Source: Vitrella brassicaformis CCMP3155 (taxonomy: Eukaryota > Protista > Chromerida). From it: DNA of 64,000 bases. The translations under genes were made by a program, and so were the position numbers. Below, in pieces: positions 39,711 to 43,819 of this stretch (position 1 is its first letter; every line of letters begins with the position of its first letter). The notes beneath the pieces are model-generated. The model saw only the letters and a list, made by a program, of their open reading frames with translations, was not told the DNA's origin and did not search any database. The DNA is taken from the NCBI GenBank assembly GCA_001179505.1, contig CDMY01000410.1, positions 20,734 through 84,733 of the forward strand, in the 5' to 3' direction.

Positions 39711-41211
39711 TCACCAGACGACCGCATCGATGGCCGGGCACGTCAGCACCAAAAAGGCGCCTGCGCACACAACACATCCCGACACACAATACCCATCCAT
39801 CCATCCGTCATTCCCTCACCTCACCCACCTGTGCGAGGCATGTATCGCAGAACGGCCCTCATGACGCACCTCGCCACTCCCCGGTTGCTTCCCTCATGCC
39901 GATGGGCCACATGCGCATTCACAGGGCTGCCGTCGACGGTGCTTGAGACGGTCGAGATGGAGGGGCTGGCCAACGGCTTGCTGGCCATCGGCACTGCCCG
40001 CGGCGCAGCTGCTGGGATCTGCTGCTGCCTGGGGGCCTTGCGTATCGACTGCGCCACTACCCAAAGCAGCCATATGAAGGCCTGAATGAGATAGATGAGA
40101 GCACAACGCGTGTGTCTGTGTCCGTGTGTGTGAGAGAGAGTGTAGTGTGTATCTCTGCCTGCTTACATCGTCATTTGATGGCGCGTGTGGGTGGTTGCTG
40201 GCAGCGTCGATGCTGACAGTGACGGGCAGCTCACATGACCGGCACTGACCCACCAGCACCAACACGCGCTTCATCCACCACCACCCATTCCCTGGCCCAT
40301 GCCCCACCTCAACCACACTCAAAGCAGCCCTCAGCTGCCGACCCACCAGCCACTTGTCGAACCGGACGACGCCAACCAGGCCATGTGACTCCGTTGCGGC
40401 CACCAGTGGCTCCATGTGGGCATCCCTGACCCAGCTGCCGCACCGGCAGAGTCGACACATGCTGCGGCCGTCCAGCAGAGTGAACAGTCGCCGGATGATG
40501 GATGTGGGCAGCTGGTGAACAGACGCATGGAGGGTGTCGGGACTGGGGGAGCTGCTTGGTAGAGGGGCGCTTGATGGCCTCAGCAGGACGAACCTCGGCA
40601 GCACACCTGCACACAGCACAGCCACACAAAGGCACATGCATGACACACAGACACACACGCCGCCCGTGTGTCAGTCACTGCTGTCACTTACCGAACTCGT
40701 CAAGGATAGAGAAGCATCCCTTCGGGAGGCTTTGCACATCGTGATTACCTGGCAATGATCACATCACATACACACACATGGCATGGCAACAGACATGTGG
40801 TATGTCAGTCATCACAGCAGACAGACATGTGGTGTGGTCAGACACTGAGTACCATCGAAAGGTTCCCACAAGACGGTCCCATTGCGTGCCCCAGAGACGA
40901 CGTACTTGTAGTGAATACGTCCTGCGGCGGGCAGCAGCACCTCGGTGGAATTCCAGACGGGGAAACTGTCGCCATCTGTTGTCAGCACCACTGCTTTGCG
41001 AGTGTCCCAGCTGCCCAGTGCATCGTGACTCCCAACGACGCCAAGCCGGTCACCTGCATGACAGTGGGCAGCGCAGCGTGCCACAGATCCATCACATATA
41101 GATCATCCTGTGTGCAGCCAGCGAGTCTGACAGCTGGGTGAACCAACCGGGTTGCGTGATTGTGCATTTGCACTGAAAGGTCAGCGATGTGGTCCCTGAG
41201 CCACGCACCAT
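39711..41211 (-). CDS. CBM20 (starch/glycogen-binding) domain fused to a divergent F-box-like family domain
   Basis: Exons 41211-41148, 41053-40853 and 40748-40692 splice in frame to LTFQCKCTITQPGDRLGVVGSHDALGSWDTRKAVVL..FPVW..IHYKYVV..VLWEPFDGNHDV (CBM20 pattern); then VHQLPTSIIRRLFTLLDGRSMCRLCRCG (F-box-like) and GLVGVVRFD..CELPVTV, matching the expanded family; probable stop TGA 39713-39711. Confidence 0.75.
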
Positions 41212-41291
41212 GAGGCGGCACCGCCCTCATTCGCGAGCTCAAGCTTGCGACGAGGCAAGGGTAGCGCACAACAACAGCGGCAAAGGCAGCC

Positions 41292-42681
41292 ATGATGAGA
41301 GAGCCGCAGGTGGCTCCTCTTTCTGCAGCCGCTGCGGCAAGTACCGAAGCACCCGGCACTGAGTTGCAGGAGGACAAAGCGGACGAGGCTGAGCAGCAGG
41401 AGGCATGCCAAGATCCCAAGCTCAACACCAACAAGCGGCCGAGGCTGTCTACACCACAGCAGATGCACCCCACATGCGGCAAGATTGCCAGCAACATCGT
41501 CCCTCCCTTCCTCGCCCATCCCTATCATCATGCCCCTGGCGCCCAGGCAGCAGCGTCAGCAGCAGCAGCTGCCGCTGCGGCCTCCATTTTGCCGCCCGAG
41601 ATCTTCGGCATGCATCCCATGGGTGGTCTGGTGAGTGAGGCCGAGAACGTACTGGTCGTGGCTGCTCTGGCCGAGGAGCGGCGGAAGAACCAGCAGCTGA
41701 GGGCCCGCGTGAGAGAGCTGGAGGGGCAAGGTGAACACAGACCATTCACATGACAGGGAGAGGGAATGGGCGGGCCATCTGTGACTTTCGTGTGTCAGTT
41801 GAGGAGCTCAAGCAGCGTCTGCACATGATGATGTCGAGCCGGTCGCGTGACGACCAAGCGATAGAGGAGGCCACCAAGCGGTTCCAGTCGCTGCACTTCT
41901 CGACCGTCCTCTGCGACCTCACAATGAGAGATTGCCCTATGGTGAGGATCGAGGAATGGGTGCAGCACTGCAGTGGACAGCGTGAACATGCACCATGACG
42001 GCCGGTTGTTTGTGTGTCTGCACACAAGGTGGCGGTGAGCAAGGGATTCTGCGAGTTGACGGGCTATGAGCCGTGGCAGCTGATAGGTACACACACTTAA
42101 TACATGGACATCGATCATCCCATGTGCTGTGCGGGGGATTCTGCCTGCAGGGGTCAATTGCCGGCTGCTACAGTGCGACCAGACGTCGACGGAGACGGTA
42201 AGAGAGATCCATGACTACGTCGACCGACTCAAAAACGCCACAACTGTACAGATGCATGAGGACCTCGTGGTGAGTGACAGAGACAGACAGACAGACAGAG
42301 AGAGAGTAGGGAAGGCTTCGATACTGCATATTCTGTTTTTGCGCTTGTGTGCCTATCTGGGTGTGCGCATGTCAGGTGACGATCTTGAATCAGCGTCGCG
42401 ACAAGAGTACCTTCACGAATCTGCTGCACATCTCGCCCATCTTTCTGGGCGGAAAGCTGTACCTCATCGGCGTCCAGTCGGACGTCACCGGCTGCAAAGA
42501 CGACATCGACACGCACAACAAAACCACCAAGACACTCATCAGAGAGGTAACACTGGGGCGCCCAGCGACCTCTCTGCTGATCGATCTATCCATTCATCTG
42601 TTGCTGTGTGCTTTGTGTGTGGTTCAGGTGATCAAGCAACTATTTGAGGCGGGAATTCCTCAGAGTGAGCTCTGCATCTGA
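41292..42681 (+). CDS. Leucine-zipper + LOV (PAS) blue-light photoreceptor
   Basis: Heptad L-x6-L-x6-L (QQLRARVRELEGQVEELKQRL); LOV core STVLCDLTMRDCPMVAVSKGFCELTGYEPWQLIGVNCRLLQ..ILNQRRDKSTFTNLLHISPI..YLIGVQSDVT assembled from six GT-AG exons; stop 42679-42681. Confidence 0.88.
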
Positions 42682-43819
42682 CCTGAAGGCCCGGCGATCG
42701 AACGGACAAGACCTACGTGCGTGTGTGCGGCGTGTCTGTGTGTGTATAATGGCGTGTATGTGTATATTACGGTGGGTGGTCTGTTCTGCAATGCATACTG
42801 AGCACGTGTGGGGGCCCTGCGCTGTGTGCCAGTGGTACTCGCTCGGGGGCCATTTGGGGAATACCATCCGGATCAATGCACACACCATTCATGCATACGT
42901 CCATGTGGGCCGACTGAGCTCTTTTGATTGGCGTGACGTCTAGGGGTGTGTGCACGTCACCTGTCTGCGTGTCCGCGATAGATGGACAGTCGGCCACCCA
43001 CCCACCCACCCACCCACCCACCACACCAGACCACACACCACACCACACCACATCGCATCTGTCTCCTCTCCTTTTTGAAGCACCTACGGAGTCCATCCAT
43101 GTGAGCGTTTTTGGCGAGTGAGTGAGTCGGGAGTGTCGCAGTGTGTCGGTCAGCGAGCAAGAGAGGAGAGGCAGTCCGACTTTGTTGACACAAGCAGCAT
43201 ACACACACAAAAGATAGATTCATCCATATACAGAGGAGGGGAGAGAGTTGCGCGTGCATGTGTGCGTGAATATGGTGCGTGTGAGTACTGTGAGGGCCGG
43301 GAGGGACTTATGACTTGTGGGCGCCCTCGATATTGACGAGTCTGTCGTTTGTGAGGCGTTGTGGCACAAAATGTACGTCCGTACCTACACACACATAGCT
43401 GCTGCAGACTGTGTGTACCTATGGCCGCTATTGTATGGCCGCAGCCATATGGATCGATCGAATGATTGACTGATGGACGATCGAGTGACTCATCCATCCA
43501 TCCATCTCATCCGGCTCGTCCATCCATCCATCGCCCTCCTCTCCTTCACTCACCCCGCATCCATCGCCTTCACTTCCCTCCCCCTCTGCCCCTTAAAATT
43601 TGCCACCTTCATCGCTCGCCCGTCAGCTCATCACGTGTGTCCAGCCCTTGGGCGGTTGGGGAGGGGGAAGAATTTGAAATGAGGCTTGCCAGGAAGAATT
43701 TTGAATGTTTGTCGAGAATTCTCGCCGGGAGACAGGGACGACGTTTGTCATTCAGTGATTTTCTTACCATTTCTCAGCAGATTTGGAGCAGCCTGCGCTG
43801 TTTTTGCCCCTCTTCACCA

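What the first reader, a model, noticed from the sequence alone, without database searches (positions are those of the whole stretch)
41292..42681. Aureochrome-like zipper-LOV photoreceptor lacking the bZIP basic region
The LOV domain keeps the photoactive Cys (GVNCRLLQ, TGC at 42159-42161), both flavin-binding Asn residues and the signalling Gln (GVQ). It is C-terminal to a leucine zipper, the effector-then-LOV order of stramenopile aureochromes. However, the N-x7-R DNA-binding basic motif is absent before the zipper; an NLS-like KRPR lies upstream. Inference: a blue-light-switched dimeriser or dominant-negative partner for bZIP factors in an alveolate alga.
Basis: partly seen in the sequence, partly recalled or inferred. 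Interest (0 to 1): 0.75.

Follow-up and report, generated by a model that had tools for sequence, protein, structure and literature searches.

The report
Leucine-zipper LOV blue-light sensor, Vitrella

Summary
Window 41292-42681 (+) is a six-exon gene with GT-AG introns. Spliced transcript contigs from four runs in three studies confirm all five introns. Its 327-aa product is identical to an NCBI entry, 'unnamed protein product [Vitrella brassicaformis CCMP3155]'.

Layout of the protein:
- residues 1-110 are disordered and contain a KRPR motif;
- residues 116-160 form one long helix with a leucine-zipper heptad pattern (a: L126, N133, V140, V147, L154; d: L136, L143, L150, M157);
- a short A'-alpha helix follows, then a LOV core (180-292) with Cys217, and a C-terminal helix and tail.

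Ten of eleven LOV columns checked carry the commonest residue. The usual second phosphate-binding Arg is His234. A homodimer model gives an in-register parallel zipper (ipSAE 0.56, best control 0.01). No bZIP family is matched. A literal N133-x7-R141 string exists, but it is out of bZIP register and N133 is a core 'a' residue.

The gene belongs to a family of at least seven loci in Vitrella. In the tree these lie on the same side of a well-supported branch as the dinoflagellate LOVs. Solved aureochrome LOVs score lower than phototropin LOV1 or YtvA. I could not fetch aureochrome sequences, so no tree includes them.

Flavin binding, the photocycle and the output are untested. The scan had already reported paralogues of this gene elsewhere in this genome, with the same conclusion.

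The parts
41261..43348 (+). Minimum transcript extent: a 31-nt 5' leader, the coding region, and a 3' UTR of at least 667 nt that contains a CCCA/CA microsatellite at 42984-43063
   Evidence: Transcript contigs X1-2 (41261-42983) and X6-11 (41312-43348). An in-frame stop lies at 41262-41264 and there is no ATG before 41292.
41292..42681 (+). Coding region in six exons (41292-41730, 41799-41941, 42029-42086, 42151-42269, 42376-42546, 42628-42681). The product is 327 aa and the stop is TGA at 42679-42681.
   Evidence: The product is identical to P0001, the NCBI Vitrella brassicaformis CCMP3155 protein.
41292..41621 (+). Disordered, Ala/Pro/His-rich N-terminal region (residues 1-110)
   Evidence: AlphaFold2 pLDDT is mostly below 50. 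No Pfam family matches. There is no N-terminal hydrophobic signal (sequence).
41433..41444 (+). KRPR (K48-R51), a short basic motif resembling a nuclear localisation signal
   Evidence: Sequence. Similar K[RK]xRL strings occur in paralogues P0013 (KKVRL) and P0040 (RKRVRL, VKRLRL). Function is inferred only.
41637..41839 (+). Leucine-zipper coiled coil, residues 116-160, interrupted by intron 1 (41731-41798). Heptad a positions are L126, N133, V140, V147, L154. Heptad d positions are V122, E129, L136, L143, L150, M157.
   Evidence: A single helix spans 116-160, with pLDDT block means of 76-95. The homodimer model shows in-register contacts 126:126, 133:133, 136:136, 140:140, 143:143, 147:147 and 150:150. 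The zipper and its Asn are conserved in P0007 and P0013.
41846..41887 (+). A'-alpha-like helix (residues 163-176) linking the zipper to the LOV core
   Evidence: LOV matches in solved structures start at about residue 171-180.
41897..42492 (+). LOV (PAS_9) core, residues 180-292, spread over exons 2-5
   Evidence: PF13426 E=1.1e-10, 42.1 bits against a cut-off of 27. The best solved-structure matches are LOV domains, led by Chlamydomonas phototropin LOV1 at E=4.5e-16. pLDDT block means are 85-98 across the core. Foldseek TM-score by target is 0.91 with rmsd 1.9 A to CrPhotLOV1.
42159..42161 (+). TGC codon of Cys217, the adduct-forming cysteine in GVNCRLLQ
   Evidence: This column is Cys in 178 of 197 aligned LOV domains.
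42210..42212 (+). His234, at the position of the usually conserved second flavin-phosphate Arg
   Evidence: The column is R in 134 of 197 domains, K in 18 and H in 3. The paralogues carry R or K.
42237..42263 (+). Nine-residue insertion between the F-alpha helix and the G-beta strand (about residues 243-251)
   Evidence: A 9-residue gap opposite CrPhot LOV1. The segment is 23 residues, against 14 in 184 of 197 LOV domains. The 23-residue length occurs only in Vitrella family rows; P0021 and the dinoflagellate-type multi-LOV proteins P0018 and P0025 have 20-21.
42517..42648 (+). J-alpha-like C-terminal helix (residues 301-317), interrupted by intron 5 (42547-42627)
   Evidence: Helix 301-317 with pLDDT block means of 64-73. 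The post-LOV pattern DVT..D....H....V..F is shared with the paralogues and the dinoflagellate LOVs.
42664..42678 (+). Conserved extreme C-terminal tail SELCI (residues 323-327)
   Evidence: P0007 ends in SELCI and P0013 ends in AQLFI. Function unknown.

Best explanation
The gene encodes a soluble blue-light sensor, probably nuclear, with no enzymatic or DNA-binding output domain of its own.

Shown:
- It is transcribed and spliced as modelled.
- It has a LOV fold. The adduct cysteine, both flavin Asn residues, the NCR arginine and the signalling Gln are all present.
- The LOV domain is preceded directly by a helix of about 45 residues with a leucine-zipper heptad pattern and a core Asn.

Supported by a model only:
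- The zipper forms a parallel, in-register homodimer, which would hold two LOV domains side by side.

Inferred:
- Flavin (FMN) binds, and blue light forms the Cys217-flavin adduct.
- The Gln287 switch then changes the beta-sheet surface and repositions the flanking A'-alpha and C-terminal helices.
- This alters LOV-LOV packing in the pre-formed dimer, or exposes the conserved C-terminal helix and SELCI tail to a partner protein. Signalling would therefore run through protein-protein contacts.
- Partners could be the paralogous zipper-LOV proteins or other zipper proteins.

The gene is one member of a Vitrella-specific family of at least seven LOV loci. The LOV domains of this family belong with dinoflagellate LOVs. 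The aureochrome-like order (zipper, then LOV) is most likely convergent.
For: Gene and transcript:
- establish the gene and its splicing.
- The identical protein is also in the MMETSP transcriptome set.

LOV identity:
- PAS_9 scores above its cut-off.
- The best solved-structure matches are LOV domains, E down to 4.5e-16.
- The AlphaFold2 core has pLDDT block means of 85-98.
- Foldseek TM-score by target is 0.91 to CrPhotLOV1.
- Ten of eleven checked LOV columns carry the commonest residue.

Zipper and dimer:
- Helix 116-160.
- ipSAE is 0.56 in the median run, against 0.01 for the best of three controls.
- That mark was reached by 21 of 30 microbial proteins solved as homodimers and by 0 of 23 solved as monomers. 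For eukaryotes the figures are 17 of 29 and 0 of 30.
- The three runs agree in at least 80% of contacts, and partner pLDDT is at least 74.
- The confident interface is confined to residues 112-158, at heptad a/d/e/g positions.

No effector domain:
- Only PAS_9 and generic coiled-coil families match.

Family and affinity:
- Paralogues were found.
- The Vitrella clade has SH-aLRT 94. It lies with dinoflagellate LOVs on one side of a branch with support 97.
- The dinoflagellate identity of those relatives comes from source names: Symbiodinium, Pelagodinium and Polarella.
Against: - No flavin binding or photochemistry has been measured.
- His234 replaces the usual second phosphate-binding Arg, and a 9-residue insertion follows the F-alpha helix. 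Either could weaken or alter cofactor binding.
- Predictors readily model coiled coils as dimers, so the pass may reflect likeness to solved zippers (caveat stated).
- The g/e pairs give one repulsive contact (K132-R137) and one attractive contact (R139-E144). A heterodimer may therefore be preferred.
- No confident LOV-LOV contact was predicted.
- The output step is pure inference.
- The KRPR motif is short and its role is untested.
Confidence: 0.6

Rival explanations
1. It is a degenerate aureochrome. On this reading a bZIP-LOV gene was inherited from a common stramenopile-alveolate ancestor, or acquired from an ochrophyte endosymbiont. It then lost its basic region and multiplied in Vitrella.
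For: - It has the same order, zipper then LOV, which is rare among LOV proteins.
- The zipper has a core Asn, as bZIP zippers do.
- Paralogue P0007 gives a weak bZIP_1 match to the zipper half only: E=0.056, profile positions 35-62 of 64.
Against: - P0001 matches no bZIP family at E<=1.
- None of the three zipper-bearing paralogues has a basic region.
- Solved aureochrome LOVs score 44-50 bits to P0001. That is below phototropin LOV1 and YtvA (about 62 bits) and far below dinoflagellate LOVs (66-86 bits).
- An unrelated WRKY-LOV scores 94-105 bits to the same aureochromes.
- The 100 nearest Atlas clusters include none with a bZIP family among the family sets shown.
- The tree places the family with the dinoflagellate LOVs.
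- Caveat: no aureochrome sequence could be put into the tree.
Confidence: 0.08
2. It is a light-gated dominant-negative or modulatory partner of true bZIP transcription factors. The zipper would heterodimerise with a bZIP protein and make it unable to bind DNA. This would resemble ID proteins acting on bHLH factors, with the LOV domain controlling access.
For: - The zipper has no basic region.
- The genome holds bZIP loci, three bZIP_1 matches of which two are over the cut-off.
- The g/e charges are mixed, which does not strongly favour a homodimer (sequence).
- A KRPR motif is present.
Against: - No partner was tested.
- The homodimer model passes its controls.
- Three paralogues with matching zippers offer simpler partners.
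- Only about three bZIP loci were detected.
Confidence: 0.12
3. It is a PAS-domain scaffold that no longer senses light. The LOV-like domain would be retained for protein interaction or redox sensing only.
For: - His234 replaces the common Arg, and there is a 9-residue insertion.
- Two paralogous loci have lost the cysteine: L006 reads GINTR and L007 reads GSPYS. The family therefore tolerates loss of photochemistry.
Against: - Cys217, N216, R218, Q221, N258, N268 and Q287 are all kept.
- About 23% of the aligned LOV domains also lack R or K at the 234 column.
- The LOV core is modelled with very high confidence.
Confidence: 0.1

Closest known systems
Aureochromes (bZIP-LOV blue-light transcription factors of stramenopiles, such as VfAUREO1 and PtAUREO1a)
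   Same: A leucine zipper sits N-terminal to a single Cys-bearing LOV domain that is flanked by A'-alpha and J-alpha helices. Signalling by dimerisation is expected.
   Different: There is no basic DNA-binding region and no bZIP Pfam match. The host is an alveolate, while the literature reports aureochromes from stramenopiles only. Its LOV domain is less similar to aureochrome LOVs (44-50 bits) than to phototropin LOV1, YtvA or dinoflagellate LOVs. It has a 9-residue insertion and His234.
Dinoflagellate LOV proteins (uncharacterised; for example the Symbiodinium entry named 'PHOT', Polarella glacialis P0126, and P0017/P0028/P0036)
   Same: These are the closest LOV domains found outside Vitrella, at 66-86 bits. 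They share the post-LOV helix pattern and lie on the same side of a branch with support 97.
   Different: In them the LOV domain is N-terminal. It is followed by a Cys/His-rich CCCH-like motif that I read from the sequence and, in P0036 and P0028, by He_PIG-like regions. They have no N-terminal zipper, they read NCRFLN rather than NCRLLQ, and they lack the 9-residue insertion.
Short LOV proteins and LOV sensors that dimerise through flanking helices (YtvA, PpSB1-LOV, VVD/ENVOY)
   Same: A LOV core with only helical extensions and no catalytic output. The dimer is the signalling unit. YtvA and ENVOY are among the best sequence matches.
   Different: Here the dimerising helix is a long N-terminal leucine zipper rather than a C-terminal J-alpha coiled coil or an N-cap. 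The protein also has a disordered N-terminal region of about 110 residues. It is eukaryotic and belongs to a family specific to this lineage.
Photozipper (an engineered, N-terminally truncated aureochrome-1 used as a light-controlled dimeriser)
   Same: It is a zipper plus LOV module used for light-dependent dimerisation (PMC5812316 and PMC8184817).
   Different: Photozipper keeps the basic region and binds DNA. It is monomeric in the dark. The Vitrella protein is natural, lacks the basic region, and is modelled as a constitutive zipper dimer.

Membership tests
LOV domain (flavin-binding PAS subclass) | PAS fold, with Pfam PAS_9 over its cut-off | tested here: met
   PF13426 scores 42.1 bits against a cut-off of 27, residues 188-291. 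Foldseek TM-score by target is 0.91 to CrPhotLOV1.
LOV domain (flavin-binding PAS subclass) | Adduct-forming Cys in the GXNCRFLQ motif | tested here: met
   GVNCRLLQ with Cys217 at 42159-42161.
LOV domain (flavin-binding PAS subclass) | Flavin-contacting Asn, Asn, Gln and the two phosphate-binding Arg residues | tested here: inconclusive
   N258, N268, Q221, Q287 and R218 are present. The second Arg is His234, a column that is R or K in 152 of 197 LOV domains and H in 3.
LOV domain (flavin-binding PAS subclass) | Binds FMN and shows a reversible blue-light photocycle | not testable with these tools
   This needs recombinant protein and absorbance spectroscopy.
Aureochrome | bZIP domain with a basic region (N-x7-R/K in register with the zipper) | tested here: not met
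   No bZIP_1 or bZIP_2 match at E<=1. The literal N133-x7-R141 string has its next Leu at R+9 rather than R+10, and N133 is a core 'a' residue. The segment before the zipper is hydrophobic and acidic.
Aureochrome | Zipper N-terminal to a single C-terminal LOV domain | tested here: met
   Helix 116-160, then the LOV core at 180-292.
Aureochrome | The LOV domain groups with aureochrome LOVs | tested here: inconclusive
   Bit scores argue against it: 44-50 to aureochromes, about 62 to phototropin LOV1 and YtvA, and 66-86 to dinoflagellate LOVs. No aureochrome sequence could be fetched for the tree.
Aureochrome | Occurs in stramenopiles | tested here: not met
   The source names give the organism as Vitrella brassicaformis CCMP3155. 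By general knowledge this is a chromerid alveolate.
Vitrella zipper-LOV family (uncharacterised) | Shared signature: NCRxxQC[DE], the 9-residue F-alpha/G-beta insertion, DLVVxILN, NLLHISP, GVQxDVT, and a zipper with a core Asn | tested here: met
   Alignment of P0001 with P0007, P0013, P0040 and P0021. Insertion lengths. Clade support SH-aLRT 94. The intron inside the zipper (ELE[GS]Q|VE) is shared with P0007.

The most novel reading that the evidence does not exclude
The Vitrella zipper-LOV family could be a true homologue of aureochromes. In that case the zipper-LOV fusion would predate the stramenopile-alveolate split, or would have come with an ochrophyte-derived plastid, and the basic region would have been lost or never gained.

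This would supply the outgroup that the aureochrome tree currently lacks (PMC13737086 states that there is none). It would also bear on the origin of the chromerid plastid.
Probability: 0.07. Interest if true: 0.8.

Novelty: new variant of a known kind. Interest (0 to 1): 0.5.

Why it matters
- **Novelty of the layout.** LOV photoreceptors are well known. A natural LOV domain joined only to a leucine zipper, with no DNA-binding or catalytic output, was not described in any paper I searched. The databases label this protein only 'PAS domain-containing protein'.
- **Photoreceptors in chromerids.** Chromerids are the photosynthetic relatives of apicomplexan parasites, and their light sensing is poorly known. 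A survey of Chromera velia listed no aureochrome or VIVID homologue (PMC10739334).
- **What the family suggests.** Seven LOV loci in one alga, two of them without the cysteine, point to a lineage-specific and possibly combinatorial blue-light signalling network built on coiled-coil pairing.
- **A second origin.** It would be a second, probably independent, origin of the zipper-then-LOV layout.
- **Possible use.** It is a compact natural candidate for optogenetic dimerisers.

Tried and rejected
- **Six-frame PAS_9 search of the genome.** It found nothing because the domain is split over four short exons. Exon-wise Pfam was also weak. This is not evidence of absence.
- **Reaching the full protein by the word search.** The longest stop-free frame (186 aa) allows candidates only up to 325 aa, and the protein is 327 aa. 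I used the exhaustive representative search with exon 5 instead.
- **The literal N-x7-R string at N133-R141.** I considered it as a hidden basic motif and rejected it. It is out of register, lacks the signature residues, and its Asn lies in the core.
- **Fetching aureochrome sequences for a tree.**
  - The profile search and a search seeded with a canonical WRKY-LOV listed no bZIP-LOV protein among their best 120.
  - The Atlas search showed no bZIP-containing family set among its 100 nearest clusters.
The tree therefore lacks aureochromes, and I used bit scores to solved aureochrome LOVs as a proxy.
- **P0036 as a possible Vitrella gene.** Rejected: the best match in the genome is only 42-48% identical.
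- **The F-box reading of the upstream neighbour.** Not confirmed. F-box_4 gives E=0.014 and 15.7 bits against a cut-off of 32.
- **Exon mapping of the paralogues by strict tblastn.** It was too incomplete to compare all intron positions. Only the shared intron inside the zipper is claimed.

Full report
**1. The observation**

Reading 40800-43300 and joining the in-frame pieces at GT-AG sites gives six exons: 41292-41730, 41799-41941, 42029-42086, 42151-42269, 42376-42546 and 42628-42681. The introns are 64-106 nt and the product is 327 aa.

- An in-frame stop lies at 41262-41264 and no ATG precedes 41292 in the transcript.
- Public runs hold about 60% of the sampled words of this stretch, as expected for a spliced message.
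- Laying four of those runs, from three studies, shows contigs that skip exactly introns 1, 2, 3 and 5 with GT..AG ends.
- Intron 4 lies in a repeat that the joint table skips. It is absent from records X1-2 and X6-11, where its two flanks abut.
- The transcript runs from at least 41261 to at least 43348.
- An exhaustive search with exon 5 returned a 327-aa protein, P0001, that equals my model letter for letter.
- Its sources name it 'unnamed protein product [Vitrella brassicaformis CCMP3155]' or 'PAS domain-containing protein'. It is also in the MMETSP transcriptome set.
- The assembly size, 72.70 Mb in 1064 contigs, fits that species by my own knowledge.

**2. The LOV domain**

- Full-length P0001 matches Pfam PAS_9 above its cut-off: 42.1 bits against 27, residues 188-291.
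- The best solved-structure matches listed are nearly all LOV domains or engineered LOV fusions. The leaders are Chlamydomonas phototropin LOV1 (E=4.5e-16), YtvA and ENVOY. Aureochrome-1 follows at E=2.2e-12.
- An AlphaFold2 model built on a 46-row alignment gives pLDDT block means of 85-98 across 180-292, with the five-strand LOV topology.
- Foldseek aligns this model to CrPhotLOV1 with a TM-score by target of 0.91 and rmsd 1.9 A.

Two departures stand out.

- His234 replaces the usual Arg. That column is R in 134, K in 18 and H in 3 of the 197 domains. By my own knowledge of LOV structures, this Arg contacts the flavin phosphate.
- A nine-residue insertion sits between the F-alpha helix and the G-beta strand. 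Only the Vitrella family has the full 23-residue segment; P0021 and two dinoflagellate-type proteins have 20-21.

Neither departure rules out photochemistry, but both are reasons for caution.

**3. The zipper**

- The model has a single helix at 116-160, a short helix at 163-176, the LOV core, and a C-terminal helix at 301-317.
- Residues 1-110 are predicted to be disordered.
- The heptad a positions are L126, N133, V140, V147 and L154. The d positions are V122, E129, L136, L143, L150 and M157.
- A two-copy model of residues 112-327 gave ipSAE 0.56 in the median of three runs, against 0.01 for the best of three controls.
- That mark was reached by 21 of 30 microbial proteins solved as homodimers and by 0 of 23 solved as monomers. 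On eukaryotes the figures were 17 of 29 and 0 of 30.
- The runs agree in at least 80% of contacts, and partner pLDDT is at least 74.
- The confident contacts are same-residue pairs: 126:126, 133:133, 136:136, 140:140, 143:143, 147:147 and 150:150. This is a parallel, in-register zipper with N133 in the core, like the core Asn of GCN4 (my own knowledge).
- The tool warns that such passes can reflect likeness to solved zippers. No LOV-LOV contact was confident.

**4. No DNA-binding region**

- P0001 matches no bZIP family even at E<=1. Apart from PAS_9 it matches only generic coiled-coil families, all below their cut-offs.
- Paralogue P0007 gives a weak bZIP_1 match (E=0.056) that covers only the zipper half of the profile.
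- A literal N-x7-R string exists (N133...R141). The next zipper Leu is at R+9, whereas bZIP proteins have it at R+10, so my regular expression for the bZIP pattern found nothing.
- The AA and S/C signature positions of that string are L/R and V.
- The segment before the zipper is hydrophobic and acidic in P0001 and non-basic in the paralogues.

**5. The family**

- Exon 5 finds six further loci in the same genome.
- Four of them correspond to annotated proteins: P0007 (284 aa), P0013 (563 aa), P0040 (307 aa) and P0021 (176 aa), all from Vitrella.
- P0007 and P0013 have the same zipper with the same core Asn. The intron inside the zipper (ELE[GS]Q|VE) is shared at least with P0007, and both have a similar C-terminal tail: SELCI and AQLFI.
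- Two loci have lost the cysteine: L006 reads GINTR and L007 reads GSPYS.
- A word search over 5.8 billion proteins with the zipper-plus-LOV region found only P0001 and P0007 at E<=1e-5.
- The profile search found nothing else with this layout.

**6. Relatives outside Vitrella**

- The nearest are P0017, P0023, P0036, P0028, P0064, P0065 and P0126, at 66-86 bits for those scored.
- They share the post-LOV helix pattern, but their LOV domain is N-terminal and is followed by a CCCH-like Cys/His motif. P0036 and P0028 also match He_PIG.
- P0064's cluster holds Symbiodinium entries, P0126 is from Polarella glacialis, and P0025 is from Pelagodinium beii.
- One P0017 contig begins with GCTCAAG, the end of the dinoflagellate spliced leader by my own knowledge.
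- A quick maximum-likelihood tree of 87 LOV domains gives the Vitrella family as one group (SH-aLRT 94).
- That tree puts Vitrella and the dinoflagellate LOVs on one side of a branch with support 97. Plant, green-algal, bacterial, WRKY-LOV and pelagophyte LOVs lie on the other side.
- The tree rests on 108 columns and has no root.

**7. Aureochromes**

- I could not obtain any aureochrome sequence by reference, so none is in the tree.
- As a proxy I used bit scores. P0001 scores 44-50 bits to the solved aureochrome LOVs, below phototropin LOV1 and YtvA at about 62.
- The family profile ranks them the same way: YtvA 121-123 bits, AsLOV2 115, aureochromes 98-106.
- A WRKY-LOV with a canonical LOV domain scores 94-105 bits to the same aureochromes.
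- The Atlas feature search shows no bZIP-bearing family set among its 100 nearest clusters.
- The literature reports aureochromes from stramenopiles only (PMC13737086).
- A survey of Chromera velia listed no aureochrome or VIVID homologue (PMC10739334).
- LOV fusions to DNA-binding domains (bZIP, HSF, homeobox, WRKY) are described for other plankton (PMC8017926). I found no description of a zipper-only LOV protein.

**8. Mechanism**

Shown: the gene is expressed and encodes a Cys-bearing LOV protein behind a zipper.

Supported by a model: a parallel zipper homodimer.

Inferred:
- FMN binds and blue light forms the Cys217 adduct.
- The Gln287 switch repositions the A'-alpha and C-terminal helices on a pre-formed dimer.
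- Output runs through protein contacts, possibly by exposing the conserved C-terminal helix and tail.
- The protein may be nuclear, because of KRPR and similar K[RK]xRL strings in the paralogues.

Mixed g/e charges (K132-R137 repulsive, R139-E144 attractive) leave room for heterodimers with paralogues or with the few bZIP proteins of the genome.

**9. Verdict**

This is a new variant of a known kind of photoreceptor, belonging to a family specific to this lineage. Earlier follow-ups in this scan, on paralogues elsewhere in this genome, reached the same reading. I checked their claims independently here.

Noticed in passing
window 39711-41226 (minus strand); CBM20 exon at 40815-41084: The upstream neighbour is transcribed divergently, with CT..AC introns at 40604-41146. 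It carries a clear CBM_20 starch-binding domain (E=9.7e-16). Its proposed F-box is only a weak match (F-box_4, E=0.014, 15.7 bits against a cut-off of 32). The observed 5' ends of the two transcripts lie only about 35 bp apart (about 41226 and 41261), so they probably share a bidirectional promoter.
   Followed up: partly
L006 (G000:C1063:987-4100) and L007 (G000:C328:63625-66735): Two paralogous LOV-like loci have lost the adduct cysteine (GINTRCLFC and GSPYSLMCSD) but keep NLLH[MV]SPIFL. They may be light-blind members of the family.
   Followed up: partly
window 41860: One contig of run X7 matches the window from 41860 onward, in the middle of exon 2. It is preceded by 255 unrelated letters (CGAGAAGATCATGAGC...). 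This is either an assembly chimera with another transcript or an alternative 5' part.
   Followed up: no
window 42984-43063: A (CCCA)n/(CA)n microsatellite lies inside the long 3' UTR, and transcript contigs break there. A (GACA)n/(GA)n repeat at the start of intron 4 (42268-42315) has the same effect.
   Followed up: no
P0002 (4197 aa), P0003 (3055 aa), P0030, P0010, P0029 (metagenome and Logan proteins): These are giant proteins with many tandem LOV domains: at least 9 full-length LOV domains each in P0002 and P0003. P0033, with 4 LOV domains, is from a pelagophyte. The organisms of most of the others are unknown.
   Followed up: no
P0017, P0028, P0036, P0064; L009:1-7: These dinoflagellate proteins share an uncharacterised layout: an N-terminal LOV domain (NCRFLN motif), then a KNTFL box, a CCCH-like zinc-finger motif, and in some a He_PIG-like domain. 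The Symbiodinium member is mislabelled 'PHOT'. Contig L009 starts with GCTCAAG, the end of the dinoflagellate spliced leader.
   Followed up: partly
P0068 and about 50 relatives: WRKY-LOV proteins are abundant in marine metatranscriptomes. They have a DNA-binding domain followed by a LOV domain, the same order as aureochromes. The class was already described by Coesel et al. 2021 (PMC8017926).
   Followed up: no
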